Sequence record: NC_029020.1
Length of the DNA stretch: 50,918 bases
Direction: 5' to 3' (one strand)
The notes beneath the pieces are model-generated. The model was not told the origin of the DNA and did no database searches. It saw nothing but the letters and a program-made list of their open reading frames with translations. This document shows, piece by piece, positions 3,439 through 48,049 of this stretch. The translations under genes were made by a program, and so were the position numbers. Each line of letters starts with the position of its first letter. Within the stretch, counting starts at the first letter, position 1.

Positions 3439-3506
3439 ATTAACGTGGGTTTTTTTCTGACCTAGCGACGGCAATACGTGCATCTATTTCTTTCATAGTC
3501 ATCGCT

Positions 3507-10571: not shown

Positions 10572-13500
10572 ATGAAGAGGAAAGTACTGGTTGGTTTCCT
10601 GTTCCTCTTATTCCTAATTGCGACAGTACAGGCAATCATAACTACTAATTCGCAAACACCACCTTCAGCTTCAGCATATGTTGGGAGCATTAGTGTACCT
10701 TCAAACCCGTTCATCCTGAATACGACGTTACCAGCGATAAACCAGCTTGGCTCAAACATACGTTTCTTCGAGTACCCTAACCTGACGGGACAGCTATACG
10801 CCTATGAACAGCAACTACCGCAAACGATATCCACTGTGAACAGTGTTGAGTCCACAGGATGGCATGTGTTTCCTTATTGGGAAGATGGCGAATTGGTGAT
10901 AAATAGCACTGGTAGTACTGGCCAATATATAGCCTGGAGATATTCGCCGATATCAAATTCCATCAACATTACTATCCACGTGACGTCGTTCCCAGTATAT
11001 AATTTTAATCCTGGTATTGATATATTCTCAGCAAATCCGTCTACGGCTTATGATTGGCATGGTGGTAATTATTATTGGCTGGCAATACAGTGGTCTGGTG
11101 CTTATCAGTATATCACCCCTTGGGGTGGCTTGTCTCCAGTTACTGGTTCATCTTCTATACCTAACTTGATGGGTAAAGTGTTTACGGAAACCGTAATCCT
11201 CACGGAGAACAGTGCTGGTAACATAACGATATCGCAGATCTACGTTAACGGGACGCTCTACAGCACCCCTAATATCGATATACCCTTCCCGTGGAACCAA
11301 ATTTATTGGATAGGGATAAGAGGCGACGCTGACAACGTCTTCTACGTTTCGTACTTCGGCGTCTCCCCAGCACCTTATGGCGGTGTTGAACAGTTCGTGA
11401 ACAACGTAGAGACTAAGTATAACATGTTTTCTGACTGGCAAAACGGTCAGTTACTAGTAAACACCTATCCCGTAGTCGTTACGGTGAATAATTCGCAACC
11501 GATCGCTACTCCAGCACCCTTCGACCAATTCTTAAACATATCAGAGTCACAAGTAGCCTCAGCCTTTGGTTCTAGTCTCACGTCTCAACCTAATCTCGCG
11601 TCTCAACTATGGCAACAGGCGGTGTCAGACCATTTCCTCAATTTGTTATTTACACAAAACGGGCAACCACTCTACGCTTGGATACAAAATTACACTTCTT
11701 CATGGGTGGCGGTGTGGGTAAAACTGCCTAATGGTATACCTGCGTCGTCTACAGCGAGTATATACATCTACTTCACGAACACTATCCAATACCCTTACAC
11801 TGGTATAAACCCACTGCTAACTCCTTCTTACGGTCAGTATGATAACGGTCAAAACGTGTTCCTCTTTTACAATAATTTCGCCTCTTCGTCTTCATTAACT
11901 AACTTTAAGGTGATAAATGGGACTAACCCATCTCTAGCAACAGTTACATTCAATGACGGTTTTAATTTAACAGCACAAGCCACAAGCACAGTGAACTGGT
12001 ATGTCCTTAATTCGACTGTGTCATTTAGCGAGCCAGTGATGGCATACGCTGACATTAACGTATACTTGTTCGGTTCCACGTCAAATCCTTACGATTTAAG
12101 GACAGCTTACCCGATGCTCACAGACAACTTATCGGCACTTAATTATGAAACTAACTTGTATGTAGGGCTTGAGAACCAATGGTCTGACAGCGTTGCCATA
12201 TCAATAAGTGTAAATGGTGAAGCTGGTTATTGGGCGTTCTTCGCGACAAACGACAGCGGTAACGCTTACCAATATACGACAAGTATCCAGGGCTCTGTAA
12301 GCGAGCTTTGGGGAGTAGGTTACGGTTATTCCACATCAGTAGGCTATTTTTATGAACACTTACTAAGCACTACATATACAATAAATGGTGCACCGAGGGC
12401 TAACCACCCTATGAGCCTTGTCTTAGGTTTTGATGGAACGCCTTCTGCTAAATTCTCAATAAAGACTTTTTACGTATTTGTTGCACCTCTTCCGCCTAAT
12501 AACGTAATGCCGTCTATAACAAGTGTATCAAATAGTGGTGGTGTTGGTGGTCAATATATTGCTTGGAAATATTCACCAATATCAAATACCATCAACGTCA
12601 CCATTCACGTAACATCGTTCCCATCAGCAAAGGGTAATTCTAGTATTGCCGTCTACTCACCTAACGTAGGAGACCAATCATCTGATGGTAGCAGTGGTTT
12701 CTACGCGTTATTTGTTGACTTCTACGGTGACTCGATATATTTTCACTCTCCAACATCTGGTTGGGTACAGCTCTACTCTTCTTTGCCTCAACCTAACCCC
12801 AACTATCCGTTCACTTTCAGTGTCATCTTGACGGAGAACTCCGCGGGTAACGTCACAGTACAGAGCATATACATTAACGGCACAGCCTACTCCGTTAACT
12901 TTAATACTCCATTCCCGTGGAGCCAGATAGGCTATGTTGGAATAAGAGCCGATACTGGTAACATCTTCTACGTCTCCTACTTCGGCGTCACACAGCTGTT
13001 AGACGCATACTCTCTTGTCACCAACCCTGCCACTAACACGCCTTACACTGGCACGGTTTACGTAGCGGTCTTCCCCTACCCCATCAGCTACGACGTTTAC
13101 GTATCACCAGCACCGATTGTAAACTCTCAGTCCCCTCTCCCGATGTTCTCACCTTCATTTACTTCAACGACAACGCTCTACCCCGTGATTTCGACTAACG
13201 TGAACTACGGCGTCATAAATATATGGACTACTTCTGGATCCGTTACGGCGAGTAGCGGTACAGTTAACATCATCCCTTCNATAGGTGCGTGGACTTCCGT
13301 CTCNCTCTCTACGAATACCGTCCCGAACTTCCTCGTGAACGGTACAGTAAAGAGCGGTAGTGTAAGCGGTAANACAATTACACTAAGCGGGTTAACTGGT
13401 ACTTCAACTGTAGTATTNCCNGACAACTTCATACCTTCTTCAACGGCTGGAGTNACGACCTANAACGCTACNTTTAACGAGATAAAGACTACNGCTTCTT

Positions 13501-15263
13501 CCCTAACTTTCACAGTCAACACACANATGTTTGAAAGCGGTGTACCAGTGATAGGNGCAACTCTCGGTGAGAACTGGTATTACTACGGCTTCTACTCTAC
13601 TGCGGGTAGTTACAACNTACCGTTATTCCTAACTACGTTAGCTGTAGGNAACCAGATTTATGCGAATATTCCAATGGTTGAAAGTATACTTTGGCATCCT
13701 TTTCCATACTGGCAAAACGGTGAACTGGTGATAAATGCTACTGATGCATCTTTTCAGTACATAGCGTGGAGATATTCGCCAATATCAAACGTCATCAACG
13801 TCACTATCCACGTAACATCGTTCCCAGTGCATAATGGTGTCTATTACCCTGGTATTGAAATCCTCATGCCTAATGCGAGAGAAATTGGTGGCGATAATGG
13901 TAATTATCTGTTATTAGTTAACATCTACCATGGTTCGATATATTTCAATACTCCAACATCTGGTTTCACACAGCTTTACTCTTCTCTGCCTCAGCCCAAC
14001 CCCAACTACCCGTTCACCTTCAGCGTCATCTTGACGGAGAACAGTGCTGGTAACGTCACGGTACAAAGCGTATACATTAACGGCACGGCGTACTCTGTAA
14101 ATGTAAACACTCCTTTCCCGTGGTCACAGATAGGTTATGTAGGGTTAAGAGGCGATTTTAGCTTATTCTACGTCTCCTATTTCGGCGTCAACTCAATTCC
14201 ATTAGTCTCTTCCTCAGGCGTCACATCCTTTAACTTCTATTCGCCGTTCTCTCTCTCCTACACTATCACAAACACTTCGATCACAGTCCAAAACACACAG
14301 CTGGTTGATGGAGAAAACTACCTCATAATCCCAGGCACTAACGGCATCATAGGTGCGTCTTTCGCGTTTTACAACGTAACGGATAACGTCCCAGTCCTCG
14401 CGGTGTCCTCTTCTCCTGTGTCCGTAACGTACAACGCACCGTCACGGGCTTTCACGGTGGTTTCCCCGTCTCAGTCGTTCGTAGTTTCGCCATTCGGAAC
14501 ACCAGAACAGAACTATCAGTCACTCACTGGTGGCGTTGTGGTTCTCCCTCAATCCGAAGAAGTGAGTTTCTACGCTAACTATCAACCCAACCTGGTGTCG
14601 TCTTCAACCGCACCTCCGCCACCGCCACCTCCCACCACAACGACCACACCTACTACCACCACTACCATCAACCCCAACCAGGTTACAGTCGTAATCAACG
14701 GCAGTGTCTATCTAACGGCACCCTGGCTGGTTCACTATTCGATTCCTTCTGTAAACGGCAGTGTTACGGCGTACCTGGTTTACAACTATTCAACGAACAA
14801 GCCCGAGCTGGTGCTTTCGTCTCCTACGAACGTTAACGCGAACGTTACATTTACGGCGTCCAACGGCACGGTACTCTTATCCGAAAGCGTCGTGTCCCCG
14901 ACCACCGTAACGCTACCAGTGACTACTGGAAACGTCACGGTGAAGACCGCGAACTCCACTATTACGCTACCCCTCACTTACCAGCGGTTCAACGTCGTTT
15001 CCCTGACCAACGCGATTATGAATTCGCCCATCATGGGAGCGGTCGCGGTTCTCGTGCTGTTCTTCGTGTCGTTCTACATCGGCTTCGTGTTCAGGACGAT
15101 ACCTAACAGCATGGCACTAGGGGCTGTAGTTTACATCACCGCAGTGGCACCCTTCCTCCTCGCCATAGGCTTCCCGATGTCCATAGTGATGATGACCGTC
15201 ATGCTAGCGGTCGTTGCACTGATATACTCCGTCTGGGCATTAAGGGTAACGAACGTGAAGTAG
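10572..15263 (+). CDS. Large secreted, membrane-anchored beta-rich protein (1563 aa) with three lectin-like repeats and a DUF2341-like module; probable adhesin/receptor-binding protein
   Basis: Signal peptide; three repeats (W..FPYW.NGEL...QYIAWRYSPIS...TENSAGN...FYVSYFGV); DUF2341-like AWIQNY..VWVKLP..IYIYF..YDNGQNVF; P/T linker; C-terminal TM helices; many NxS/T. Confidence 0.8.
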   Translation: MKRKVLVGFLFLLFLIATVQAIITTNSQTPPSASAYVGSISVPSNPFILNTTLPAINQLGSNIRFFEYPNLTGQLYAYEQQLPQTISTVNSVESTGWHVFPYWEDGELVINSTGSTGQYIAWRYSPISNSINITIHVTSFPVYNFNPGIDIFSANPSTAYDWHGGNYYWLAIQWSGAYQYITPWGGLSPVTGSSSIPNLMGKVFTETVILTENSAGNITISQIYVNGTLYSTPNIDIPFPWNQIYWIGIRGDADNVFYVSYFGVSPAPYGGVEQFVNNVETKYNMFSDWQNGQLLVNTYPVVVTVNNSQPIATPAPFDQFLNISESQVASAFGSSLTSQPNLASQLWQQAVSDHFLNLLFTQNGQPLYAWIQNYTSSWVAVWVKLPNGIPASSTASIYIYFTNTIQYPYTGINPLLTPSYGQYDNGQNVFLFYNNFASSSSLTNFKVINGTNPSLATVTFNDGFNLTAQATSTVNWYVLNSTVSFSEPVMAYADINVYLFGSTSNPYDLRTAYPMLTDNLSALNYETNLYVGLENQWSDSVAISISVNGEAGYWAFFATNDSGNAYQYTTSIQGSVSELWGVGYGYSTSVGYFYEHLLSTTYTINGAPRANHPMSLVLGFDGTPSAKFSIKTFYVFVAPLPPNNVMPSITSVSNSGGVGGQYIAWKYSPISNTINVTIHVTSFPSAKGNSSIAVYSPNVGDQSSDGSSGFYALFVDFYGDSIYFHSPTSGWVQLYSSLPQPNPNYPFTFSVILTENSAGNVTVQSIYINGTAYSVNFNTPFPWSQIGYVGIRADTGNIFYVSYFGVTQLLDAYSLVTNPATNTPYTGTVYVAVFPYPISYDVYVSPAPIVNSQSPLPMFSPSFTSTTTLYPVISTNVNYGVINIWTTSGSVTASSGTVNIIPXIGAWTSVXLSTNTVPNFLVNGTVKSGSVSGXTITLSGLTGTSTVVXXDNFIPSSTAGXTTXNAXFNEIKTXASSLTFTVNTXMFESGVPVIXATLGENWYYYGFYSTAGSYNXPLFLTTLAVXNQIYANIPMVESILWHPFPYWQNGELVINATDASFQYIAWRYSPISNVINVTIHVTSFPVHNGVYYPGIEILMPNAREIGGDNGNYLLLVNIYHGSIYFNTPTSGFTQLYSSLPQPNPNYPFTFSVILTENSAGNVTVQSVYINGTAYSVNVNTPFPWSQIGYVGLRGDFSLFYVSYFGVNSIPLVSSSGVTSFNFYSPFSLSYTITNTSITVQNTQLVDGENYLIIPGTNGIIGASFAFYNVTDNVPVLAVSSSPVSVTYNAPSRAFTVVSPSQSFVVSPFGTPEQNYQSLTGGVVVLPQSEEVSFYANYQPNLVSSSTAPPPPPPPTTTTTPTTTTTINPNQVTVVINGSVYLTAPWLVHYSIPSVNGSVTAYLVYNYSTNKPELVLSSPTNVNANVTFTASNGTVLLSESVVSPTTVTLPVTTGNVTVKTANSTITLPLTYQRFNVVSLTNAIMNSPIMGAVAVLVLFFVSFYIGFVFRTIPNSMALGAVVYITAVAPFLLAIGFPMSIVMMTVMLAVVALIYSVWALRVTNVK

Positions 15264-15331
15264 TAGTGAAATTCGATGCAATGCATCCGAAAAGCTTTTT
15301 AATCACCGCTCAACCATATGTACGAGGCAAA

Positions 15332-15679
15332 ATGACGGATAAGTACTTCCCAAGGAAAGAAGACGTAGTAGGTGGTGCAAGGAATCTCCTCAAGGCTATC
15401 CTTGATGGCAAGATAAACAAATACCCCGAGATATCGCTGAAGATCGCTGGCATCGAGGCCAACGCTACTAGAGATGGCTATCCGCAGGTAAAAGAGATCC
15501 TTCACAGAGTAGTTGAGGCTATAAGGACTGCCGTTGAGCAGGCCAGCCTCAAGAGGAGGGGCATGGGCTTCCAGAACGTAGAGATCCCGCCCGAAGTTCA
15601 ACAGCAGTACATGCCCGTAGTCCAGGAAGCATATCAATTGTTATCTTCAATGGCGACAAACAAGATGGCTAACGTGTAA
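15332..15679 (+). CDS. ATV p131-like four-helix-bundle virion protein, paralog 2
   Basis: MTDKYFPRKEDVVGGARNLL...KYPEISLKIAGIEANA matches remembered ATV p131 MAKYEPKKGDYAGGA...YPEVTLKLAGEEANA; start moved to ATG 15332, in frame with track ORF 15266. Confidence 0.8.
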   Translation: MTDKYFPRKEDVVGGARNLLKAILDGKINKYPEISLKIAGIEANATRDGYPQVKEILHRVVEAIRTAVEQASLKRRGMGFQNVEIPPEVQQQYMPVVQEAYQLLSSMATNKMANV

Positions 15680-38625: not shown

Positions 38626-39015
38626 ATGAACGGAAACGAGATAGTAGAAGAAATTTTAGAATTCCTAAATAAAAAAGGTGCTAAGTTCGATATAGATCAG
38701 TTCGAAACCGAAAACAAAACGCTCAAACTTGAAGTAGAATTCCCGAAACCTATAATTCTAACTGAAACGGAATACGATATGCTGTATGATCTTCTGAAGA
38801 GCTTAGGGTTCTATCCTGTAAACGGGGCCGAAAACAAGATAAACGAATATGTAGGGTATAAAAATTATACAGGAATAGAAGAATTCGAAAACGATGCAGG
38901 AGACAAAATATGGTTAGAATACAACAAGGTTTCGGTGGGAGGAGAGACTACTTATTTTGTTAAAAATGTAGAAGTCGAGCTCAATACGGAAGAATTCATG
39001 AACCTGCTTTTCTAA
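38626..39015 (+). CDS. Acidic small protein, candidate AcrID1-family anti-CRISPR (paralog 2)
   Basis: IVEEILEFLNKKGAKFDI..LTETEY..LL..LGF...GAENKI aligns with 36404..36865; contains EEFEN; promoter AAAGCTTAAATT at 38581. Confidence 0.55.
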   Translation: MNGNEIVEEILEFLNKKGAKFDIDQFETENKTLKLEVEFPKPIILTETEYDMLYDLLKSLGFYPVNGAENKINEYVGYKNYTGIEEFENDAGDKIWLEYNKVSVGGETTYFVKNVEVELNTEEFMNLLF

Positions 39016-39272
39016 ACCCTGAAAGCATCATTTTATTTTTTATCTTTAATAAGAAAGCCAGTTTTTCAGCTATAGAGTTCTTGAAAAGTCGCGGTTCAGT
39101 CTGCTAAACATACGGTTGAGGCGAAATCATGGCAAGCCTAACGAGGTTACGGTAAGTTACGCGTCTTAGAACGTCTGGGAATCAACCCCTTAGTCGAAAT
39201 AGAAAAAAGAATAATATATTTAAAAAGAAAAAATTGGCTTCAAAAAGAGAATACGAGACGGCACGTGCTTTT

Positions 39273-40196
39273 CTACGTGATTATTTTGATGCTGAAAATG
39301 CGTGAAGATGGATTAAATAATAAAATTCGTAACCTTTCATGCTTCAGCTTTTTGACGAATCTCTGATTGTTGACCTTGTAATCAACAACGAAGCGTTTGA
39401 GCCCGGTTATGTAATCCGGCAACGTTTTATATAACTTGACCGCCTCCTCCCTTTTACCGTCCTTCAGAAGTAACAGTACAACGGCTACCTTGACCAATAT
39501 CGGGTTGTACAGCTTTAGCAATTTATCAAGGAGATTAACATACCCGTATTTGCTCAGGAGCTCGTACGTATACTGCCTTAGCTTTCGCATTTTCGTCTTT
39601 AGTAAACCCTGCATTTCTTCCTTCGTTAAGCCGAGCTTCTCTTTCAGGACGTAACTTAATTCGAACATGGCATCGGATAGTTTCTGTTTTATTGTGTCCT
39701 CATCATCAGTTGAGAAATTACCGATTAGCTGAATGATGCGGTCTGGCTCGACGTCGCAATACTGAATAGCAAAAGCACCCAATATGTAGAGCTTGTTTGG
39801 AATTTTCCTGCGGAGCATCTTTTGTGCTATTCGCCTGAAGAGGGCTTTCTGTGCAGAGTCCGAAATTAACAAAGAAACCCTATATGCAAAGGAATAATAT
39901 TTCAGTCTCGTGTCGTATTCTACAGGGATCGTGCTGATTCCACCGTACGGTAAAAATGTATTTGCGGGACGATAATGGGTATAAATTTTATATACTATGT
40001 TGAACCTGCTTGACGAATCGTCTATTCCTTCTAAATTGCTGGCGAAGTACTTCTCGTAGTCGTAGCCGATTACTTCTCCGTTGTCCGCACAGACGAGATA
40101 TATGCCGTGAGTCACGATTTGTTTACACTGAACACTTTCAGACTGGTCAAAAAACATTTGGCCGAAAGTTTGAGTTTGAACGACTGCTTCTGTCAT
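39273..40196 (-). CDS. Hypothetical protein, 307 aa
   Basis: Long ORF. Confidence 0.7.
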   Translation of the reverse strand: MTEAVVQTQTFGQMFFDQSESVQCKQIVTHGIYLVCADNGEVIGYDYEKYFASNLEGIDDSSSRFNIVYKIYTHYRPANTFLPYGGISTIPVEYDTRLKYYSFAYRVSLLISDSAQKALFRRIAQKMLRRKIPNKLYILGAFAIQYCDVEPDRIIQLIGNFSTDDEDTIKQKLSDAMFELSYVLKEKLGLTKEEMQGLLKTKMRKLRQYTYELLSKYGYVNLLDKLLKLYNPILVKVAVVLLLLKDGKREEAVKLYKTLPDYITGLKRFVVDYKVNNQRFVKKLKHERLRILLFNPSSRIFSIKIIT

Positions 40197-40330
40197 ACCG
40201 AGTCAATTATGGCCGGGGACTGTTTAAAAAGTAATACTGTAGTGAAATGCATAATACCGTAGAATGGGTCTAATCAGAAAAAATTGAATTTGTTGTTAAA
40301 TTATAAATTACAAACTCGTCAGCGTAATTA

Positions 40331-40552
40331 TCACTTTTCTGCTTTCAACAATATCTCGTAAGGGCTTGGAACGTTGTAAATTAAAGATTTAAGATTTTCT
40401 AGTATTTTCGATATTCCATCATATACGCTGTCATACTTAGGATTNTCTTCGCTGAGATAAAAGTAATCTTTTTCTAAATCCTTAAAATACCTTAAAATCT
40501 CTTCCAAAGACCTTTTGTACTGTTCATAATGTTTGTCTGCATTGTCCAGCAA
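40331..40552 (-). CDS. Small helical hypothetical protein (probably the 3' part of a gene starting ~40668, disrupted by Ns or a frameshift)
   Basis: ORF track; upstream promoter at ~40700 and ATG at ~40668. Confidence 0.45.
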   Translation of the reverse strand: MLDNADKHYEQYKRSLEEILRYFKDLEKDYFYLSEXNPKYDSVYDGISKILENLKSLIYNVPSPYEILLKAEK

Positions 40553-40745
40553 TGTAAGTAACTTAAGTTAGCTCTTTCTCCTTTAATAATGTAAGAACGC
40601 TCTTACCTTCAGTGGTCGAATTTTGNTTANNGTTTTCTGTACTTTGTTCGTCCCAGAACTCCTGAGCCATACTTATCCCATGCTGATTCTCTCAAACGGC
40701 TGTATAAAAGCTTTATGTCGGAAAGCATATAATGGATCGGTGTTT

Positions 40746-41003
40746 TCATTCCTCTGGGATTATTTCCTTGATGTAAGCCTTATGGATGTATGTGGTTCTA
40801 TTTGACATGTCTACAAATTCTATGAAGTATTTTTGATTGTCGTTTATCTTACCCTCTATCGTGGAACCGTCGTGAAAAACTATTCTGCATGCCTTCCCTA
40901 CCCACTTCTTCCCGAAATCGCCGAACTCCTTAACGCCGTTTTTCTGCTCCTGCTTCATNTTCATNTTTTGCTTCAAGCTTTTCACCCCGATGCCCGAATT
41001 CAA
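40746..41003 (-). CDS. Sm/Lsm/Hfq-like fold protein
   Basis: WVGKACRIVFHDGSTIEGKINDNQKYFIEF...TTYIHKAYIKEIIP matches the Sm1 (V.I.L.NG..L.G.I) and Hfq Sm2 (MVYKHAISTVVP) patterns. Confidence 0.65.
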   Translation of the reverse strand: MNSGIGVKSLKQXMXMKQEQKNGVKEFGDFGKKWVGKACRIVFHDGSTIEGKINDNQKYFIEFVDMSNRTTYIHKAYIKEIIPEE

Positions 41004-41170
41004 ATTTAGCNGATTAGGTTTTTAAAGNANGNNGNCTGGTGCTTTCCTATNTGCCTCAAACGGCTGTTTGAGCCTGCCTCAGGCTATAAGCCCGTAATCC
41101 GTATGATTCTGACGGGCGAAAATATTAAAAACCGGGATGTGCTAAAATATACGAAAAGGAGGCCAGAAAA

Positions 41171-41737
41171 ATGCAGGCTAAACCAAGTTACATAGACCCG
41201 ACCTCAATAAATAAGCTTTTCGGTCAAGCTCCTTTCAGGTCTGAAAAGGTCGCCAAGATATTTGAGNTNCTNAGCCTGGGCAGACCGATGTTAGCGAGGG
41301 ATCTGGCAGAGGCAATTAACGTCCCTTCGAAGCAGATCCTGCCGAGGCTGAAGAGGTACATCCAGAGGGGATGGGTCGCCGTCCAGAAGGTAAACAACAT
41401 CAACATCTATTCCCTCACCGAGACGGCCAGGAANATATTGAAGCTACAGGGCAGTTTCGANAAGGTAAGGGAGAAGGCCGAGAAGGTCTTAGGGAGGAAG
41501 CTGGAAAGCGACGAGCTGGAGATCCTGAAGTTCTTCTATAAGGAGCAGAGGTACATAGAGAACTCTCCGAATGAGACGATTGCAGAGCAGGTGTGGCACT
41601 CCGTCGGGATGAAGATCCCCTTGTCAAGGGTACAGGAAATACTAACCGAGTTCACGCTGAGAGGGATCCTGTTCGCCTTCAGGCTGAAGAACGGGCAGAT
41701 CTTGAAGGTGAGGCTGAACAGNAACCTCCTTCTCTAG
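41171..41737 (+). CDS. Tandem winged-helix DNA-binding protein
   Basis: ARDLAEAINVPSKQILPRLKRYIQRGWV...YSLT plus a second wHTH-like half (LSRVQEILTEFTLRGIL). Confidence 0.75.
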   Translation: MQAKPSYIDPTSINKLFGQAPFRSEKVAKIFEXXSLGRPMLARDLAEAINVPSKQILPRLKRYIQRGWVAVQKVNNINIYSLTETARXILKLQGSFXKVREKAEKVLGRKLESDELEILKFFYKEQRYIENSPNETIAEQVWHSVGMKIPLSRVQEILTEFTLRGILFAFRLKNGQILKVRLNXNLLL

Positions 41738-42158
41738 CTAAAGAAGGGCTAATGGACGCCTAATTCTATACACCATTTTTCTCAATTTAGTAATAAAAAT
41801 TCTAAGCAACGTACCTTCCCGCCGTAAATTGTAAAAGCCTGCTTTACGGCGAAAGTAATTATTTGTATAAAGCCCGCGNTCTANCGGCGTAAATNCAAAA
41901 TNCNCTAAAAGGAGATATATTATAATTACTACTACCCCGCTTTTNGCGACCGCTANGCGTGCNGGCCGGCGTTCTTTTGGTGCCGTTGGTTTTACGCGTT
42001 TTTACGGAGACTAGCTTACACTGTTGTTAGACTAATTGAGTTTTTNCTTTTACAGCNGGAGAAATTATTTGGTAGGGTAATGCGTAGTGTGAGCGGGCTT
42101 TACTACCTGCTTATACTAATTGCCTGTATGCTCGCTATATTCCGGTCAGACCTCACAA

Positions 42159-42240
42159 CTCTCCAGTAGTAGTTATTGCAAGCGGTTTGCCGGATTGACT
42201 GGAGATCGTCAAACCGTCTGGCCCTCAAACAGCCGTTTAA
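42159..42240 (+). repeat. ori-like element 1 upstream of Rep
   Basis: 21-bp CTCTCCAGTAGTAGTTATTGC, hairpin CGGTTTG..CAAACCG, then TCAAACAGCCGT; homologous to 43378-43457. Confidence 0.85.
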
Positions 42241-42289
42241 CTGATCTAAAACACATTAACGTTATTAAACCCTAAAACCGACATAGATT

Positions 42290-43159
42290 ATGGTAGGGGA
42301 TCATATTATGACACGGACACGTTTCACTGACGAAAGAATGGCCAAAGAATCTCTCCTTAAGAGTAAAATGGCACTTGAAAACGCCTTCAAACGTTATAAA
42401 GATGCCATCATGGTTACCCTGACGGTGTCACATATATTCCCACTAGTAATTCCTTTAGAAGTTAATGGCCAGAGTATTAGCTATATTCCCCTTCAGGACT
42501 CAATAGTTTCAAATCTGAAGAATTACCTATTGGNCTGGNNNAGNNAAATGTGGAAAGACCGCAAAATTGAGACATTCACAGCTTACGAATATCACGAGGA
42601 TTACAATTTATACCTTCACACCATAATTTTTGGTATTCCTTGTCTCATCGATTGGTCTAAAAAATTCGGTAAGAAAAAGGAAGACGCATTAACCTATTAC
42701 GCCCGGAAGTACAATATCCCCTTACCTCCTGACGCCGAAAAGACCCTAATTTCCAAATCCGTTCTCACCGTGTTATCAGACAAATGGCTCATGAAAATTT
42801 TGGCAAAATTTGACTCAGTACTCAACACTAATCTATTAATGGGTTACATAAACTACAAGATGAAATATAATTTACAAGGGCCAACGATTGAGATATATAA
42901 GATTAAGGACGGTCAGTGGGATGGCACGCCTCCTAGCGACGCCGTTATTCAATATTCAGGTGATGTTAAATATAAAAAAGTTTTATCGCCAGAAGAATAT
43001 GTTACCAAAAATATACTCAGAATCTATAGCATGTTAAGAGGAGGAGGTGGAAGAATAGACGAAGAAGACCAAGCAAAAACCATTGGCTATTGGTTATTCG
43101 GAAAACGATTTAATTCCTATTCCCTCTCTTTGTTGTCACAGGAAAAAGGCACCACTTAA
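42290..43159 (+). CDS. HUH-superfamily rolling-circle replication initiator (Rep), possibly degenerate
   Basis: Motif 1 MVTLTV, motif 2 YEYHEDYNLYLHTIIFG (first His appears as Tyr), motif 3 EEYVTK, C-terminal YWLFGKRFNSYS. Confidence 0.7.
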   Translation: MVGDHIMTRTRFTDERMAKESLLKSKMALENAFKRYKDAIMVTLTVSHIFPLVIPLEVNGQSISYIPLQDSIVSNLKNYLLXWXXXMWKDRKIETFTAYEYHEDYNLYLHTIIFGIPCLIDWSKKFGKKKEDALTYYARKYNIPLPPDAEKTLISKSVLTVLSDKWLMKILAKFDSVLNTNLLMGYINYKMKYNLQGPTIEIYKIKDGQWDGTPPSDAVIQYSGDVKYKKVLSPEEYVTKNILRIYSMLRGGGGRIDEEDQAKTIGYWLFGKRFNSYSLSLLSQEKGTT

Positions 43160-43377
43160 ACTTTCGTAATATTTTTGAACTAACATTTGACTAATTAAAT
43201 TCAGGAAACTTATAAATTTTCCACGATATATTTATGGAAGAACAACATTTGTCATTCGGTGTTTACTTTTACTTGTAGGGAAATTTTTGCGGAAGGATAT
43301 GCGGAGGGGAAACAAAAGGGGATAAGGCTTTGCTATTTGTTTGTATACCTGTTACCTATAGCACGATATTCTCCACT

Positions 43378-43457
43378 CTCTCCAGTAGTAGTTATTGCGG
43401 GTAGTTGGTCGGCCTGACAGGGGATTGGGTTAACCACACGTCAAACAGCCGTATAAC
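43378..43457 (+). repeat. ori-like element 2 downstream of Rep, same orientation as element 1
   Basis: Identical 21-bp CTCTCCAGTAGTAGTTATTGC, similar core (CGG..TGAC.GG.GAT), then TCAAACAGCCGT. Confidence 0.85.
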
Positions 43458-43613
43458 GGTTGGATATTGACTTCCTTCCAGCTCTGAAGGGCGGTGTAGT
43501 TAACTCGAGCTGAACCGCGTTATTGTGTTGGACGCATGCTCCCTCAAACAGCCGTTTGAGGACAGCACAATGGTTGGCGGACAGTCCCAACCTCAAAAAA
43601 CGAAATCCTCTTT

Positions 43614-44165
43614 TCACATTTCAGACCACATCCCAGTCGCCATTAGAATGTAGATTACGCTCATTGCCTCCCCGAACGACGCCAAGACGCCGACAATTAA
43701 TGCCAAGTCATTCGCGAACAGTTGTAGCGGAGGAGCGAGGAACGGTAATGATACTCTCTGCGTCATAGGCAATAGGATCACGTAGACATACAGTGCAATG
43801 CTTTCAAAGCTGTTGAAAATGAACTGAAGCACTAAGTAAATGAAGATTATCTGGAGTGTGCCCATTGTCTGCTGTGACAGGTTCAGGACATAATTCCTTA
43901 CAAACAACGCACCGATGGTAGTGATCCCTCCTAACATTGCTCCAGCTATTACGCCGTTACTACCGAACAGCTTTCCTAAAAGAGACTCCAAATATAACGG
44001 TAGGTTTAACGACATCAAATACGATATATAATGTGCAACTTGGGTATCCGTCGAATACGCATTTAAGTTAACGATGGTTCCCAGTATATAGACGAAAATA
44101 GACGAATACATTATACCCTCATTAATCCTGTAAAAGACAGTGGCGAGCGACCCAATGAGACCCAT
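43614..44165 (-). CDS. Polytopic membrane protein, 183 aa
   Basis: Four to five hydrophobic helices. Confidence 0.7.
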   Translation of the reverse strand: MGLIGSLATVFYRINEGIMYSSIFVYILGTIVNLNAYSTDTQVAHYISYLMSLNLPLYLESLLGKLFGSNGVIAGAMLGGITTIGALFVRNYVLNLSQQTMGTLQIIFIYLVLQFIFNSFESIALYVYVILLPMTQRVSLPFLAPPLQLFANDLALIVGVLASFGEAMSVIYILMATGMWSEM

Positions 44166-44187
44166 AAAAAAGACTTTGAACCTTGGA

Positions 44188-44382
44188 TTAAAAAACCTGG
44201 CTTTCGGACGACTTGAGACGGAGTGGGTTCCCAGGGGTTTTTGTCAGACAGTTTCCATTAAGATAAGACTCGATGGCTTCCCTGACTACATCGCTCCTCG
44301 ACATCCAATTGTTCATGGCGAACAGATCGAGTTCTTTCAATAAATGTTCGGGGAGCTTGACCGTTACGACCTTCATTTTCAT
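44188..44382 (-). CDS. CopG-like ribbon-helix-helix regulator
   Basis: KVVTVKLPEHLLKELD...SRSDVVREAIESYL. Confidence 0.88.
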   Translation of the reverse strand: MKMKVVTVKLPEHLLKELDLFAMNNWMSRSDVVREAIESYLNGNCLTKTPGNPLRLKSSESQVF

Positions 44383-44696
44383 TTGTGATCACCTGTTGGC
44401 TCTTTTTCGACTACCGAATAGATGCGGAATAAATTGGCTCCAATTTTTTGATTTAAAAACGATAGCGTCTCCAAGACCTTTTTTGCTTGCCAATTGTTTT
44501 TCAGAGCTATATCTGATCTAAGAGATCGCACCATGGATGACAATCTGCTGACGTCCTCCTCCAGCTCCCTGAAGATCTCCTGGATCTCCAACTCATTCAT
44601 TCCTCCTCGCCCCTCCCCTCCGATCGTTTCAGAAAAAAGGGCGGTGACTTTTTCATTTCCCTTGGGGAAGTTACCCACAGTAACCATTTTCCTCAA
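44379..44696 (-). CDS. SSV1 D63-like helical-hairpin protein (core probably starts at ATG 44600)
   Basis: EIFRELEEDVSRLSSMVRSLRSD...QKIGANLFRI versus remembered D63 [23 protein letters not shown]...QKIEAELYQL. Confidence 0.65.
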   Translation of the reverse strand: MRKMVTVGNFPKGNEKVTALFSETIGGEGRGGMNELEIQEIFRELEEDVSRLSSMVRSLRSDIALKNNWQAKKVLETLSFLNQKIGANLFRIYSVVEKEPTGDHK

Positions 44697-44714
44697 TGAA
44701 TTTTACGGTCGGTA

Positions 44715-44762
44715 TAGATATTTAAAGCTTCTGCCTGCCTAGTAAGGCAGAAAACTTAAATA
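44715..44762. promoter_or_regulatory. Symmetric divergent promoter cassette D
   Basis: TATTTAA-AGC-TTCTGCCT-GCCTAGTA-AGGCAGAA-AAC-TTAAATA, a two-fold symmetric operator with a TATA box on each side. Confidence 0.85.
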
Positions 44763-44775
44763 CCAGCTTGCTCAA

Positions 44776-45360
44776 ATGATTACTTGGTCAAAAATGTCCC
44801 AGGCCCAACACCCCAAAGACGAGGAGATTTATGAAGTGCTGAAGAAAGAAGGGTTGGAGGATCTTTACGATCTCATAATGAAATACAAAGATGTGGCGGA
44901 ACCACTTTTGAAGGAAATATTATCAAACAAGGACGAAGTAAAGAACATGATCGATACTTTGAAGAAAGAAGGGTTGGAAGATTTTTTAAAGGATGTAATC
45001 ATGGCTTATAACCCCAGAGCCATATTCGAACGGATTATTAAAACAAAACACGCATTAAAGAGGATTATAGACAAGTATGAGCAGGGCAACAATAAGGTAG
45101 CTTTTGATAAAGCCAATAATAAGAATACGATCGTCGCTATCAAATTCAGAACTCCAGAAGAAATGGAGGAATTCAATCGATTAGCCATTGAAATGGATGA
45201 CCTTAGAAATGGAAAAGAGCCCGAAGCCTTGGAAATGACATACGAAGAATTCGCTCAAAGGTTCAAACCGAGAATGATATGGTATAAAAGAATAGGGAGC
45301 GAGAAAGAGGGTACTTATTCTNCTTTGATGGGAGGTTACAGATTTGACGAAGAATTATAA
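44776..45360 (+). CDS. Hypothetical acidic helical protein with an internal 40-aa-spaced repeat
   Basis: LKKEGLED occurs twice; identical 19-bp DNA at 44840 and 44960. Confidence 0.7.
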   Translation: MITWSKMSQAQHPKDEEIYEVLKKEGLEDLYDLIMKYKDVAEPLLKEILSNKDEVKNMIDTLKKEGLEDFLKDVIMAYNPRAIFERIIKTKHALKRIIDKYEQGNNKVAFDKANNKNTIVAIKFRTPEEMEEFNRLAIEMDDLRNGKEPEALEMTYEEFAQRFKPRMIWYKRIGSEKEGTYSXLMGGYRFDEEL

Positions 45361-45758
45361 GGTCGTAATTTTACNTATACCATTTATTNATGACNNGGAT
45401 GTATTAATCGCTTCAAAGCTGTACGAAAAACGTCTACTCCCCTTTCGTTCAGTGATNATGAAGATCTCCTGCCAAGAGGATTGATCATATTCATTCCCAG
45501 NTAGAAAAACTATTTTTCTTTATCTTAGTCCATTTCGCCCNGAGACGNGCNCTTACTTCTTCTGCTGAGACTGCGTGGGCNTGCGTGGGACTCCCTGCTT
45601 CTGCCTCCTTCTTCCGTGGCCTATTTCGTGGACTCCCAAGAATCAGTCTTAACTAAAAGGAAAGGGTAAATTAAAAACGCCTCCGTCCCTTCATTGGTAG
45701 GGGATGAGGTCTACTATTTTTATTGATGTAATTCTAAGTCCAATGTGGGAGATCGTAA

Positions 45759-45899
45759 ATGAGAGACAAGGAGAGGTGGGAGGAAGAAATAAAATACATG
45801 AAAGTACATAAGTACACAATGATAGCCCTTGTAATTCTGCTAGATGCAGTAATAAGAATAAAAACGATTCTTAGAAAAATACTCGTAAAACTAAGCTGA
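45759..45899 (+). CDS. Possible 46-aa small protein with one hydrophobic helix (below the ORF-track cutoff)
   Basis: MRDKERWEEEIKYMKVHKYTMIALVILLDAVIRIKTILRKILVKLS*, read by eye. Confidence 0.35.
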   Translation: MRDKERWEEEIKYMKVHKYTMIALVILLDAVIRIKTILRKILVKLS

Positions 45900-46233
45900 T
45901 TTCCTCCAACGGACGCGGTTTCTAGTGATGAATAATGAAAGTGAATAAACACACAATATCAGCCCTCGAAGTTTTGTTTTCTGTAATAACGGGAATAAAC
46001 TCCAAGCAGATGATAGTAACCGATAACAATCAAGAAAGTAGAGATGGTATGAGCCCCGAGGAAAGGAGTGNNATCATAATAGGGCTTATTATAGCCCTTA
46101 TTGCTTGTGCTATAGTTTGTTACCTNCNTATTACNAANCAAATCGTCTGTGCACCAAACACAATTTGAATCGGTTCTACGCTTAAATGATTTCCGACCGA
46201 AATCTATATTAGTNNNAGTTAGAGGCTAATCTT

Positions 46234-46512
46234 ATGAAAGTAGTGACGAAAAAAGAATCACCAACAAAGTTCCTGTTCAACGCGATGACCAGNGACGAAT
46301 ATGAAAAAGCTAAGAGGTTCCATGAGTTTCTCAAAAACATCTCTAAAGGNNCGCACGGTTACCTAACGATCGAATGGGANGATCTCATNGATATGNCATC
46401 NGGCTTCTTGAAGACCACGCCATATGATGCATATCGGATTCTGATGAAGATGAAGGANTACGGCTGGATCAAGGAAATCGACAGGCATTTTATTATCGTT
46501 AACACCGATTGA
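46234..46512 (+). CDS. Small protein with a wHTH-like C-terminus
   Basis: TPYDAYRILMKMK.YGWIKEI. Confidence 0.55.
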   Translation: MKVVTKKESPTKFLFNAMTXDEYEKAKRFHEFLKNISKXXHGYLTIEWXDLXDMXXGFLKTTPYDAYRILMKMKXYGWIKEIDRHFIIVNTD

Positions 46513-46515
46513 AAC

Positions 46516-46981
46516 TCACTCTTTAAGCCCAGGCAAGATTTTACTTCTAACTATTGAATATCTACCGTATTCCGGGTACTTCTTGTAGACGTAGTTCAGG
46601 ATCTCCGTCCTGCTCTTCCTAACCCATTCTCTGAAGAACGCCTCGATCTCCTTATCCTCTTCACTTGGCGTAAACTCACTCGTTAAGACGTAATGCCACT
46701 TGTACGTCTATTACTTCTCCGCTCAGCGGATCCCTTACTTCCTCCTCTTCCTCGATATCGACCTCTCCTATTTCAATCAGTTTATCGATAAAGTTTTGTA
46801 GTTTTGAGGAGTAAGGGCCGAAGAACCAGGGTTTAAATTCTAGTCCTAAATCAATTCCTTTCTCCTTCTCAAGTAAAAAGAAAATCTTCTGAAGCTTAGT
46901 CGCAGTTACCTCCGTGCTCTCCTCTTTAGCGGTGTAAAGCAATAACTTAATTAAGCGATAAATTCTGTCCTCAATTATCAT
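46516..46981 (-). CDS. Panacea/SocA (DUF4065)-like antitoxin-family protein (~154 aa); one apparent frameshift at ~46712
   Basis: TKLQKIFFLL, FKPWFFGPYS; the shifted frame continues TYKWHYVLT...EILNYVYKKYPEY...KE* to TGA at 46518-46516. Confidence 0.65.
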
Positions 46982-47043
46982 GGCCGATTACCCTTAATTA
47001 ATACTAATGCTGTTAAAATGTGGAGAAAAAAGTATTAACTGAA

Positions 47044-47442
47044 TTAAATTGGAGGTGGGGCTTGCTGGGGAGCCTGGTTGGTAGTTTCTTGGACTTGTAC
47101 TGGCTGGGCCTCCTTCTTGGCTTTCCTTTCCTTCCTCCCGTCTTCGGGAAGGTACTCTCTGATCAGTTTCGCTACATCATCAAGCTCTGACTTCTTCTGC
47201 ATCCAGACCTTGAGGAGTTCTAGCAACTGCTTTCCCTTTTCGGTTATATAGTATAGACCATCCTTGCTCTCTACGAGGCCCAATTTCATGAGTTCTTTGA
47301 GATAGTTGTCCGTTAGATCGTATGAGAGATTGGCCCTGTACATCACCCAGGTCTTCCTTGACCCGTTCTGGCATTGATCCAAAACGTTTTGTATTATTTC
47401 ATACTTGCTTCTTTTTTTCCTTCTGAGTTTAACCTGGCTCAC
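47044..47442 (-). CDS. Archaeal winged-helix transcription factor (HTH_45-like)
   Basis: RSKYEII..VL...KTWVMYRANLSY....YLKELMKLGLV...YYITEKG. Confidence 0.88.
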   Translation of the reverse strand: MSQVKLRRKKRSKYEIIQNVLDQCQNGSRKTWVMYRANLSYDLTDNYLKELMKLGLVESKDGLYYITEKGKQLLELLKVWMQKKSELDDVAKLIREYLPEDGRKERKAKKEAQPVQVQETTNQAPQQAPPPI

Positions 47443-47590
47443 GAATACAGTTGAAATCTATCTGTTATTTAAATTTTAGCTGGCACTGAGGGAGACAAAA
47501 TGCGTTCTTTCAGACGTTTAGTAATTCTCAGATCTCAGGGTTAAAGTTCGAGATTTCGCCTTGGAAGGTTAGGAAGCTTTTAAGCCATAA

Positions 47591-48049
47591 ATGAAAGTTA
47601 TAATCGTGGGTTTACGGATTTTAAAGTTCATGGTAGTGGGAGGCTTGGGGACTTTAGTCAATGAAGGAGTTTTCGTACTTGCAGTACGCGAAATGCCTAT
47701 TTTCTTCTCCTTGGGCCTCGCGATAGAGCTTTCCATATTGTTTAATTTTGTACTGAATGACGTCTGGACTTTTAGGGATAGAAGGGCTGGAAGCTTCGTT
47801 AGACGATTGTTGAAATTCCATTTGTCTTCCTTTAGTGGCGGAGTTGTTCAGTATATTGTGGTTATCGCATTACTAATCATGTTCCTCGGTTTGCCCAGCA
47901 TTTCCGAAATCATTTCCTTAATATTCTTCTCTCACCTCGAGGCCCAATCGATGTTCCTCGCTGTTATCAATTTCATAGGGATCCTTTCGGGCTTCATTAT
48001 AAGGTACTTGACTAGCCTAAGATATGTATGGGTGCTACGTAATGGCTAA
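47591..48049 (+). CDS. gtrA: GtrA-family lipid-linked sugar flippase-like membrane protein
   Basis: LKFMVVGGLGTLVNEG...SILFNFVLNDVWTFRD...KFHLSS. Confidence 0.85.
   Translation: MKVIIVGLRILKFMVVGGLGTLVNEGVFVLAVREMPIFFSLGLAIELSILFNFVLNDVWTFRDRRAGSFVRRLLKFHLSSFSGGVVQYIVVIALLIMFLGLPSISEIISLIFFSHLEAQSMFLAVINFIGILSGFIIRYLTSLRYVWVLRNG

What the first reader, a model, noticed from the sequence alone, without database searches (positions are those of the whole stretch)
42159..43457. HUH Rep gene enclosed by two same-strand ori-like elements: an excisable rolling-circle unit?
Two homologous ~80-bp elements lie 1219 bp apart on either side of Rep. Each has an identical 21-mer, a hairpin-prone core and the AAACAGCCGT site. 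Two nick sites in direct orientation around a Rep would allow initiation at one and termination at the other, releasing a ~1.2-kb ssDNA circle as in IS91-like or Rep-based transposons. Alternatively they are initiation and termination origins of the virus. HUH motif 2 reads YLH (TAC instead of CAC), so the Rep may be inactivated or domesticated, or this may be a consensus error.
Basis: partly seen in the sequence, partly recalled or inferred. Interest (0 to 1): 0.75.

Follow-up and report, generated by a model that had tools for sequence, protein, structure and literature searches.

The report
Domesticated Rep gene, not excisable circle
A virus of hot-spring archaea carries a shortened copy of a plasmid replication-initiator gene that has lost key catalytic residues yet is kept by selection, and the repeats on either side of it are ordinary plasmid/virus backbone and regulatory DNA rather than rolling-circle origins.

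Summary
The window is the complete genome of Sulfolobus monocaudavirus SMV2. The sequence facts hold. A 21-mer found only twice in the genome lies 1219 bp apart on either side of ORF 42290-43159. That ORF is an HUH-type Rep relative reading YLH instead of HLH.

The "excisable rolling-circle unit" reading is not supported:
- The repeats are two copies (334 bp and a partial 206 bp) of a non-coding module. The same module lies next to the same wHTH gene in conjugative plasmid pSOG1, and a weaker match to its 3' end occurs in SMV1 and SMV4. None of these carries a Rep.
- "AAACAGCCGT" is half of a palindrome (CTCAAACAGCYGTTTGAG) with 28 near-matches across SMV1, mostly just upstream of start codons.
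- Among 80 metagenomic Rep loci, only L020 carries these motifs, as does the separately fetched syntenic contig L002. Each has one module copy.
- Autonomous 2.2-4.9 kb circles encoding the nearest full-length Reps carry a different GC-rich hairpin.

The Rep is a core-only derivative. It lacks both termini, the first HUH histidine and the second tyrosine of YxxKY. TAC is real, because an independent contig shares it. The gene is under purifying selection (dN/dS 0.21). A second virus-associated lineage evolved the same truncations and substitutions independently. Best reading: an exapted, probably non-nicking Rep.

The parts
41171..41737 (+). wHTH gene of conjugative-plasmid type (annotated 'conserved conjugative plasmid protein')
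   Evidence: Weak Pfam TrmB wHTH hit. 58% identical homologues in pSOG1/pSOG2 and 51% in pTC1, absent from other viruses. In pSOG1 it is followed by the same non-coding module.
41911..42244 (+). Conserved non-coding module, upstream full copy. It starts with AATTACTACTAC, holds the 21-mer and ends with the palindrome.
   Evidence: Conserved in L002 545-908 and L020 79-420 and in pSOG1 3501-3709 (nhmmer E 7.4e-18). The 12-bp long-range inverted repeat ACTACTAC/GTAGTAGT is kept in all of them. No thermodynamic or covariation signal for a fold.
42159..42179 (+). 21-mer copy 1 (CTCTCCAGTAGTAGTTATTGC)
   Evidence: The core AGTAGTAGTTAWTG is conserved in L002, L020 and pSOG1.
42222..42241 (+). Palindrome-family site (CCCTCAAACAGCCGTTTAAC), right half degenerate
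42242..42289 (+). Proximal promoter region of the short Rep gene (TTATTAAA TATA-like box about 22 nt before the ATG)
   Evidence: 42223-42277 is 94.5% identical to L002 887-941, against 82.5% in the coding region. The TATA assignment is by eye.
42290..43159 (+). Short Rep-derived ORF (289 aa; GenBank CDS AIZ11382 starts at 42308). HUH core only.
   Evidence: 109 homologues. Alignment A1. AF2 pLDDT 85 and Foldseek top hits are HUH nucleases. phrog_25834 E 3e-161. dN/dS 0.21.
42410..42427 (+). Motif I (MVTLTV)
   Evidence: T43 and T45 invariant, L44 nearly invariant.
42611..42619 (+). Motif II, Y-L-H (TAC CTT CAC); the family has H-u-H
   Evidence: The first residue is His in 83 of the 86 family proteins aligned over the core; the 3 exceptions (Tyr) are SMV2, P0001 and P0068.
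42998..43012 (+). Motif III, Y-V-T-K-N; the family has Y-x-x-K-Y
43254..43459 (+). Partial second copy of the module (profile positions 125-339)
   Evidence: nhmmer E 1.3e-19. It lies in the 283-bp SMV2-specific segment 43253-43535 that L002 lacks.
43378..43398 (+). 21-mer copy 2
43438..43457 (+). Palindrome-family site, degenerate (ACGTCAAACAGCCGTATAAC)
43541..43561 (.). Best palindrome copy (CCCTCAAACAGCCGTTTGAGG). Homologous to the palindrome after the Rep gene in L002 (1922-1943) and L020 (1690-1709).
   Evidence: ssDNA hairpin z -4.4.
41055..41072 (.). Palindrome copy (CTCAAACGGCTGTTTGAG) in the divergent promoter region before the wHTH gene
40691..40708 (.). Palindrome-family site (CTCAAACGGCTGTATAAA)

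Best explanation
ORF 42290-43159 is a Rep-derived gene. It was captured from small rolling-circle plasmids of Sulfolobales into the plasmid-like variable region of an SMV2-type virus. It was then cut down to the HUH core and kept as a functional protein whose nicking chemistry is crippled.

The flanking direct repeats are not its origins. They are two paralogous copies of a backbone non-coding module shared with conjugative plasmids and, in its 3' part, other monocaudaviruses. Each ends in a copy of a palindromic, operator-like motif that is dispersed through these viruses.

Shown:
- Homology, truncations and the residue changes.
- Purifying selection.
- Independent recurrence of the same changes in a second lineage.
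- Rep-independence of the module and the palindrome.

Inferred:
- The protein still binds DNA or partner Reps but no longer runs a nick-and-join cycle.
- It acts in trans as a regulator or competitor, for example a dominant-negative inhibitor or origin blocker of co-resident Rep plasmids, or a recruiter of them.
- The second module copy arose by recombination next to the downstream palindrome.
For: Identity of the window: 100% match to KP238129.

The Rep family:
- 109 homologues, mostly 400-505 aa.
- Eight of the 80 metagenome loci are closed circles of about 2.2-4.9 kb by terminal overlap.
- Motifs uTLT, HuH and YxxKY.
- Relatives P0019 and P0091 pass the Pfam REP_ORF2-G2P gathering score.
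- AF2 model pLDDT 85, pTM 0.86. The best PDB fold matches are parvovirus NS1/Rep nuclease domains, the Helitron transposase and gemini/circovirus Reps.

The SMV2 protein:
- It lacks about 100-200 N-terminal residues (including the wHTH of the long forms) and about 30 C-terminal residues. It has H108Y and Y241N.
- L002, from an independent ENA metagenome, is syntenic at 77.5% nt over 1.9 kb. It also contains the SMV backbone membrane-protein gene and shares TAC and YVTKN.
- dN/dS SMV2-L002 is 0.21, bootstrap 95% interval 0.15-0.33, with no frameshifts.
- The proximal promoter is more conserved than the coding region (94.5% against 82.5%).

Phylogeny:
- SMV2 and P0001 are sister to C-truncated but motif-intact Reps that sit in larger elements. 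These are L020, and L025, which has a ParB-like gene and a C5-methylase gene.
- A distant pair (P0059, P0068) has the same N- and C-terminal truncations, with Y-to-N in both and H-to-Y in P0068. These lie on contigs with ATV_ORF273 genes.
- Monophyly of the four short forms is rejected (AU p 0.018, lnL difference 85). Each substitution arose twice on the tree.

The repeats:
- pSOG1 has the module, including AGTAGTAGTTATT and its partner ACTACTACT, downstream of the wHTH homologue and with no Rep.
- SMV1 and SMV4 have weak matches to the 3' part of the module, dominated by the palindrome (E 4.5e-4 and 5e-3).
- The palindrome has 28 sites in SMV1 against 0.2 expected. 14 are intergenic although only about 12% of the genome is non-coding, and 12 lie 9-72 nt from a start codon.
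Against: - No biochemical or expression data exist for this protein.
- The remaining His110, Tyr237, Glu100 and Lys240 are invariant even in the short forms. Residual single-tyrosine activity therefore cannot be excluded.
- Fold matches to HUH nucleases are weak (best E 6e-3, TM about 0.26). SMV2's own sequence gets no Pfam hit.
- The proposed trans-acting role is inference only.
- The 21-mer is perfectly conserved between two module copies that are otherwise about 65-79% identical. That shows constraint on a site whose function I cannot name.
- The AU test group was defined after seeing the tree.
Confidence: 0.6

Rival explanations
1. First reader's model. The two elements are initiation and termination origins. 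Rep nicks at one and rejoins at the other, releasing a 1.2-kb ssDNA circle as in an IS91- or Helitron-like unit or a replicative-release unit.
For: - Same-strand direct repeats with a perfect 21-mer bracket an HUH gene.
- One catalytic Tyr and one His are retained.
- Mobilisation in trans by a full-length Rep from co-resident plasmids is conceivable, and such plasmids are common in the same springs.
Against: - The module and 21-mer core exist without Rep in pSOG1, and the 3' part matches weakly in SMV1/SMV4.
- L002 and L020 have one copy only.
- The other 79 metagenome Rep loci have neither motif.
- The related circles have a different conserved GC hairpin.
- The elements are not hairpin-prone.
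- The AAACAGCCGT site is a genome-wide operator-like palindrome.
- The protein lacks an HUH histidine, a Tyr and two domains.
Confidence: 0.04
2. The direct repeats are scars of cassette insertion by recombination. A circular intermediate carrying Rep plus one copy of the upstream sequence integrated, Campbell-style, into a resident copy. The palindromes act as cassette borders or recombination hot spots. The unit could still loop out rarely by homologous recombination, independently of Rep. This is compatible with the best explanation for the protein.
For: - In L002 and L020 the Rep cassette is bracketed by the palindrome alone.
- Homology between L020 and L025 starts at the palindrome.
- The SMV2-specific (283 bp) and L002-specific (217 bp) indels both abut the downstream palindrome.
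- In the independent second lineage the short Rep is bracketed by duplicated 30-36-nt promoter copies (L207, L209, L040, L221).
- The region differs between SMV1, SMV2 and SMV4 while its flanks are shared.
Against: - The two module copies are old or diverged (about 65-79% identity), so this was not a recent insertion.
- No circular [module+Rep] molecule was seen among the fetched loci.
- No recombinase is linked to the palindrome.
- In SMV1 the palindrome's position 9-17 nt before start codons fits an operator or 5' element better than a recombination site.
Confidence: 0.2
3. The short Rep is still an enzyme: a single-tyrosine (Y1-type) HUH nuclease or transposase acting on hairpins, analogous to IS200/IS605 TnpA or to RAYT/REP systems.
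For: - Y237, H110, E100 and K240 are invariant in all short forms.
- The same two substitutions arose twice, which hints at a specific new state rather than random decay.
- In L040, L221 and L222 a second-lineage short Rep sits between an IS200/IS605-type left-end hairpin and a TnpB-like ORF, the position of tnpA. The hairpin is identical to that of the annotated SMV1 IS element.
- In SMV2 the gene is surrounded by five palindrome copies.
Against: - A Tyr in place of a metal-binding His has no precedent that I know of in active HUH enzymes (from general knowledge, not tested).
- SMV1 and SMV4 have the palindromes but no Rep.
- SMV2 has no IS605-type hairpin.
- No complete LE-Rep-TnpB-RE element was recovered, and other second-lineage contexts (L207, L214) lack the hairpins.
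Confidence: 0.1
4. The ORF is a decaying remnant with no function.
For: Truncated at both ends, with two catalytic residues lost. No other virus in the phage/archaeal-virus collection or in IMG/VR has it.
Against: - dN/dS 0.21 (interval 0.15-0.33) over dS 0.58, with an intact frame.
- Conserved promoter.
- A second lineage, with at least 20 contigs, keeps the same short form.
Confidence: 0.05

Closest known systems
Two-tyrosine HUH rolling-circle initiators (phiX174 gpA type; Pfam PF23343 REP_ORF2-G2P)
   Same: Motif order uTLT, HuH, YxxKY. HUH-nuclease-like predicted fold. The full-length relatives are encoded on 2.2-4.9 kb circles with a conserved hairpin.
   Different: The SMV2 protein has YLH and YxxKN, lacks the N- and C-terminal regions, gets no Pfam hit itself, and lies in a 51-kb dsDNA virus with no family-type origin nearby.
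Non-coding region downstream of the wHTH gene in Sulfolobus conjugative plasmids pSOG1/pSOG2
   Same: Same gene-module synteny. Shared blocks TTTTACG..GACTAATTGA..CTTTTAC and AGTAGTAGTTATT with the upstream partner ACTACTACT (E 7.4e-18).
   Different: pSOG1 has one copy and no Rep. Its published putative origin motif TCTATACCCCC (PMC4390865) lies about 1.3 kb further on and is absent from SMV2.
Domesticated HUH proteins with dispersed palindromes (RAYT/REP) and IS200/IS605 TnpA
   Same: An HUH protein with a single tyrosine, surrounded by dispersed palindromes. In a sister lineage it sits in the tnpA position next to a TnpB-like ORF.
   Different: No sequence relationship to TnpA or RAYT was shown. 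The first HUH histidine is lost. The palindromes also occur in viruses without the gene (SMV1, SMV4).
IS91 / Helitron rolling-circle transposons
   Same: HUH fold; the Helitron transposase is among the fold matches. Direct-orientation elements on both sides.
   Different: Those need an intact HUH plus two tyrosines and distinct ori/ter ends that travel with the gene. Here the catalytic set is incomplete and the ends are backbone DNA found without the gene.

Membership tests
HUH endonuclease / Rep superfamily | Motif I (uTLT-like) ahead of the HUH strand | tested here: met
   MVTLTV at residues 41-46; T43 and T45 invariant and L44 nearly invariant in 32 sequences.
HUH endonuclease / Rep superfamily | HUH motif: two metal-binding histidines separated by a hydrophobic residue | tested here: not met
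   YLH (TAC CTT CAC). Of the 86 family proteins aligned over the core, 83 have His at the first position; the 3 exceptions (Tyr) are SMV2, P0001 and P0068.
HUH endonuclease / Rep superfamily | Catalytic tyrosine motif (this family: YxxKY, two tyrosines) | tested here: inconclusive
   YVTKN: the first Tyr and the Lys are kept, the second Tyr is lost.
HUH endonuclease / Rep superfamily | HUH-nuclease fold | tested here: met
   AF2 pLDDT 85. The best PDB matches are almost all HUH nuclease domains, but scores are weak (E 6e-3 to 0.3; TM about 0.2-0.3).
HUH endonuclease / Rep superfamily | Profile match to a curated Rep family | tested here: inconclusive
   The SMV2 protein has no Pfam hit. Relatives P0019 (30.0 bits) and P0091 (28.4 bits) pass the PF23343 cut-off of 27.8; others fall below it.
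Rolling-circle transposon / excisable Rep unit (IS91-like, Helitron-like) | Terminal ori/ter sequences that travel with the Rep gene in other copies or relatives | tested here: not met
   The 21-mer and the AAACAGCYGT site are absent from 79 of the 80 metagenome Rep loci. L002 and L020 have one module copy. The module occurs without Rep in pSOG1, and its 3' part matches weakly in SMV1/SMV4.
Rolling-circle transposon / excisable Rep unit (IS91-like, Helitron-like) | Catalytically complete transposase (HUH plus two Tyr) | tested here: not met
   H108Y and Y241N.
Rolling-circle transposon / excisable Rep unit (IS91-like, Helitron-like) | Circles, empty sites or multiple copies | not testable with these tools
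   No reads are available. There is a single copy in SMV2, and the only SMV2-like relative (L002) has the gene at the same place.
Double-strand origin of a rolling-circle replicon | Nick site presented in a conserved hairpin next to the Rep gene | tested here: not met
   The elements fold no better than shuffles. The related circles have a different hairpin, CTCCGGCGGTGG..CCACCGCCGGAG.
IS200/IS605 | Subterminal LE/RE hairpins flanking the gene(s) | tested here: not met
   No CCYCGCC..GGCGRGG hairpin anywhere in SMV2. They are present next to second-lineage short Reps in L040, L221 and L209.

The most novel reading that the evidence does not exclude
The short 'YUH / single-Tyr' Reps are a new class of working HUH enzymes rather than dead proteins. 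They would be Rep-derived Y1-type nucleases or transposases, evolved at least twice in bicaudavirus-like elements. In one lineage they have taken the tnpA slot of an IS200/IS605-like element (LE hairpin, short Rep, TnpB). In SMV2 they would act on the dispersed palindromes to shuffle gene cassettes.
Probability: 0.08. Interest if true: 0.8.

Novelty: new variant of a known kind. Interest (0 to 1): 0.4.

Why it matters
- It removes a false lead: there is no rolling-circle transposon or nested replicon in SMV2.
- It documents an uncharacterised family of HUH Reps on 2-5 kb circles in Sulfolobales hot springs.
- It shows that viruses have twice converted such a Rep into the same short, active-site-altered form under purifying selection. 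That is a candidate for virus-plasmid conflict or for a new HUH activity.
- It shows that SMV2's variable region is built from conjugative-plasmid DNA (wHTH gene plus non-coding module).
- It shows that a palindrome, CTCAAACAGCTGTTTGAG, is a genome-wide promoter-proximal signal of monocaudaviruses. This gives a concrete operator to match to a regulator.

Tried and rejected
- Rfam and tRNA scan: nothing in the window.
- First genome-contig scan with the single protein found nothing. The second, with the alignment, found only Metallosphaera yellowstonensis MK1 (L085), with intact motifs and no flanking repeats of this kind.
- A 15-mer scan of IMG/VR gave only chance hits. The combined 21-mer-core plus palindrome pattern, and the protein profile, found only SMV2 itself.
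- RNA/ssDNA structure of the module: the consensus fold has no covariation term and the single-sequence z-score is 0.22. A structured RNA or single-strand origin is therefore not supported, but three sequences are too few to exclude it.
- The module as the published conjugative-plasmid origin: the TCTATACCCCC motif lies 1.3 kb away in pSOG1 and is absent from SMV2. Not the same element.
- The anti-defence-gene promoter repeat of SMV2 (D3/D5; PMC11065993) is a different motif from the palindrome studied here.
- PDB sequence search with the family profile gave no significant hit.
- Literature searches found no description of this Rep family or of the SMV2 gene.
Full report
**What the window is.**
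The 50,918-bp window is identical to the complete circular genome of Sulfolobus monocaudavirus SMV2 (KP238129; Bicaudaviridae). The runs of N are in the deposited consensus. The ORF in question is annotated only as a hypothetical protein (AIZ11382, 42308-43159). The longest ORF starts at 42290.

**The observation.**
- The 21-mer CTCTCCAGTAGTAGTTATTGC occurs at 42159 and 43378 and nowhere else, even with three mismatches.
- Each copy is followed 63-66 nt later by TCAAACAGCCGT.
- The ORF reads N-L-Y-L-H with TAC at 42611-42613.
- The repeat is longer than reported. A profile of the upstream region and its two metagenomic homologues matches 43254-43459 with E 1.3e-19, so about 206 bp are paralogous.
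- The AAACAGCCGT site is half of a palindrome. A better copy lies at 43541-43561 and two more at 41055 and 40691.
- The elements are not hairpin-prone. Their ssDNA folding z-scores are -0.8 and -0.1, and +0.8 and -0.05 for the homologues. Only the palindrome at 43541 folds strongly, z -4.4.

**What the ORF is.**
- It has 109 homologues, most 400-505 aa. They come from acidic hot-spring metagenomes and from chromosomes of Saccharolobus, Acidianus and Metallosphaera.
- Eight of the 80 fetched metagenome contigs close on themselves by 77-138-bp terminal overlaps, giving circles of about 2.2-4.9 kb.
- The circles nearest to SMV2's protein share a GC-rich hairpin, CTCCGGCGGTGG..CCACCGCCGGAG.
- The family has motifs uTLT, HuH and YxxKY, and some members pass Pfam REP_ORF2-G2P.
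- An AlphaFold model of the SMV2 protein (pLDDT 85, pTM 0.86) finds HUH nuclease domains as its best, though weak, PDB matches: parvovirus NS1/Rep, Helitron, and geminivirus and circovirus Rep.
- So this is a real Rep relative, and the family is essentially undescribed (phrog_25834 'unknown function'; literature searches).

**How the SMV2 copy differs from the family.**
- It is the catalytic core only. About 100-200 N-terminal residues (including the wHTH of the long forms) and about 30 C-terminal residues are missing.
- The first HUH histidine is Tyr, and the second tyrosine of YxxKY is Asn.
- This is not a consensus error. Contig L002, from an unrelated ENA metagenome, is syntenic with SMV2 41372-43252 at 77.5% identity and continues into the SMV backbone membrane-protein gene. 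It has the same truncations, the same TAC and the same YVTKN.
- Between the two, dN/dS is 0.21 (bootstrap 95% interval 0.15-0.33; dS 0.58), with no frame disruption.
- The 55 bp holding the palindrome and TATA-like box upstream of the start are 94.5% identical.
- The gene is therefore maintained by selection and is not decaying.

**Recurrence in a second lineage.**
- In a maximum-likelihood tree of 86 core sequences, SMV2 and P0001 (the L002 protein) are sister to four Reps. These lack only the C-terminal tail and keep HLH and YxxKY. They lie in larger elements: L020, and L025, which has ParB-like and C5-methylase genes.
- Far away in the tree, P0059 and P0068 show the same N- and C-terminal truncations and Y-to-N. 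P0068 also has H-to-Y.
- P0068's 90%-identity cluster has 11 members, and the two members looked up lie on 20 contigs.
- These lie on contigs encoding ATV_ORF273-family proteins, that is, bicaudavirus-like elements.
- Forcing the four short forms into one clade costs 85 log-likelihood units (AU p 0.018). Each substitution needs two events on the tree. The caveat is that the group was chosen after seeing the tree.

**What the flanking repeats are.**
- The upstream copy is part of a 334-bp non-coding module (41911-42244), conserved in L002 and L020.
- The gene before it (41171-41737, wHTH) has 58%-identical homologues in the conjugative plasmids pSOG1 and pSOG2.
- In pSOG1 that gene is followed by the same module (E 7.4e-18). 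It includes AGTAGTAGTTATT and its inverted partner ACTACTACT about 210 bp upstream, and there is no Rep gene.
- SMV1 and SMV4 lack the Rep. They give only weak profile matches to the 3' part of the module (E 4.5e-4 and 5e-3), dominated by the palindrome. A short similarity of SMV1 to pSOG1 around GTTATTACCA..AGTTGAATT was seen by eye only.
- L002 and L020 each have one module copy before the Rep and only the palindrome after it.
- SMV2's second copy sits in a 283-bp segment (43253-43535) that L002 lacks, immediately 5' of that palindrome. L002 has its own 217-bp insertion immediately 3' of the palindrome.
- Apart from L020, none of the 80 metagenome Rep loci contains the 21-mer core or AAACAGCYGT. 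IMG/VR holds the combined pattern only in SMV2 itself.

**The palindrome.**
- CTCAAACAGCTGTTTGAG, allowing up to 4 mismatches, occurs 28 times in SMV1 (0.2 expected) and 15 times in SMV2 (0.4 expected).
- In SMV1, 14 sites are intergenic although about 88% of the genome is coding. Twelve of them end 9-72 nt before a start codon, and seven end within 9-17 nt.
- It also flanks a gene in L216.
- This behaviour fits an operator or 5'-proximal regulatory site of monocaudaviruses, and perhaps a recombination hot spot. It does not fit a Rep nick site.

**Mechanism proposed.**
- Shown: a plasmid Rep gene was captured next to plasmid-derived DNA in an SMV2-type virus. It lost its termini and two catalytic residues and has since evolved under purifying selection with its own conserved promoter.
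- Inferred: the protein keeps the HUH fold's DNA- or Rep-binding surfaces but cannot run the metal-dependent, two-tyrosine nick-and-join cycle. It would then act in trans on DNA or on the Reps of co-resident small circles, as a competitor, an excluder or a regulator.
- The repeats are backbone modules. The second copy most likely arose by recombination at the downstream palindrome. A Campbell-type cassette history is possible.
- I put about 0.6 on 'exapted, non-nicking Rep with Rep-independent repeats'. I put about 0.1 on residual Y1-type activity, 0.04 on the rolling-circle excision model and 0.05 on plain decay. The recombination-scar account of the repeats (0.2) is compatible with the first of these.

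**Comparison with known systems.**
- By homology and fold the protein belongs to the HUH Rep superfamily, but it fails the defining HUH test.
- It is not an IS91- or Helitron-like unit, because the ends do not travel with the gene and the catalytic set is incomplete.
- It is not a rolling-circle origin pair.
- The nearest functional analogies are domesticated HUH proteins such as RAYTs. No family membership is claimed there.

**Verdict.**
The sequence observation is largely right. The headline interpretation is wrong.

Noticed in passing
L040 212-1603; L221 293-1788; L222 194-1054: A short Rep of the second lineage (HLH, YxxKN) sits directly after an IS200/IS605-type left-end hairpin, CCTCGCCCCTTCTAGGGGCGGGG, and directly before a TnpB-like ORF (phrog_506 E 6.6e-7). 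That is the position of tnpA. The hairpin is identical to that of the annotated IS200/605 of SMV1. The promoter AAAGTTTAAATACTTCTTT is duplicated before both genes. No complete element was recovered.
   Followed up: partly
L209 446-2103 (also L210, L211): The short Rep (YVH, YxxKN) plus 86-aa and 98-aa ORFs are bracketed by 37-nt inverted repeats containing the same IS605-type hairpin. Three ATV_ORF273 paralogues lie downstream.
   Followed up: partly
window, genome-wide; SMV1 = L219: The palindrome CTCAAACAGCTGTTTGAG is strongly over-represented (SMV1 28 sites, SMV2 15, against fewer than 1 expected). In SMV1 it usually ends 9-17 nt before a start codon, which makes it a candidate operator of monocaudaviruses. 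Its binding protein is unknown.
   Followed up: partly
window 15329-15396; L010 940-1003, L011 2340-2400, L018, L021, L035: Several small Rep circles share 61-67 bp (80-88% identical) with the 5' end of the SMV2 gene 15335-15679. That gene is a homologue of an SMV1 'conserved archaeal virion protein'. The shared piece includes the start codon and the first roughly 20 codons. It could be a recombination relic, or a hint that the circles interact with SMV-type viruses.
   Followed up: partly
window 41756-41860: A short conserved sequence after the wHTH gene (ttctaagcaacgtaccttcccgccgtaaattgtaaaag) is shared with SMV1, SMV4 and at least four conjugative plasmids. With 41843-41858 it forms an inverted pair at the position where pSOG1 has TAAACTCCCCAGTTTA / TAAACTGGGGAGTTTA. 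From memory, that pSOG1 sequence is the 'recombination motif' described for Sulfolobus conjugative plasmids; this was not verified in the paper library.
   Followed up: partly
L214 1698-1797: Seven or eight iteron-like copies of TGATCACCTC lie about 160 nt upstream of a second-lineage short Rep.
   Followed up: no
window 35567, 36894, 38072, 44714: A four-copy 41-nt promoter-type repeat, ATAGATATTTAAGCTTTCTGCCTGACTGGTAAGGTAGAAAA. It is probably the SMV2 early/anti-defence regulatory sequence with inverted repeats described in PMC11065993. It is distinct from the palindrome studied here.
   Followed up: no
L020 50-95; L025 5909-5960: IS200/IS605-type end hairpins abut the module in L020 and cut off the last codons of the Rep in L025. 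This shows frequent IS/MITE insertion around these cassettes.
   Followed up: partly
window 39000-48000: Cumulative GC skew reaches a broad minimum plateau over about 39-48 kb, which includes the plasmid-derived module. The viral replication origin might lie in this region.
   Followed up: no
window 10860-14190: Internal repeats of about 1.2-1.6 kb period lie inside the 1563-aa ORF 10572-15263, so the large structural protein appears to be built of repeated domains.
   Followed up: no
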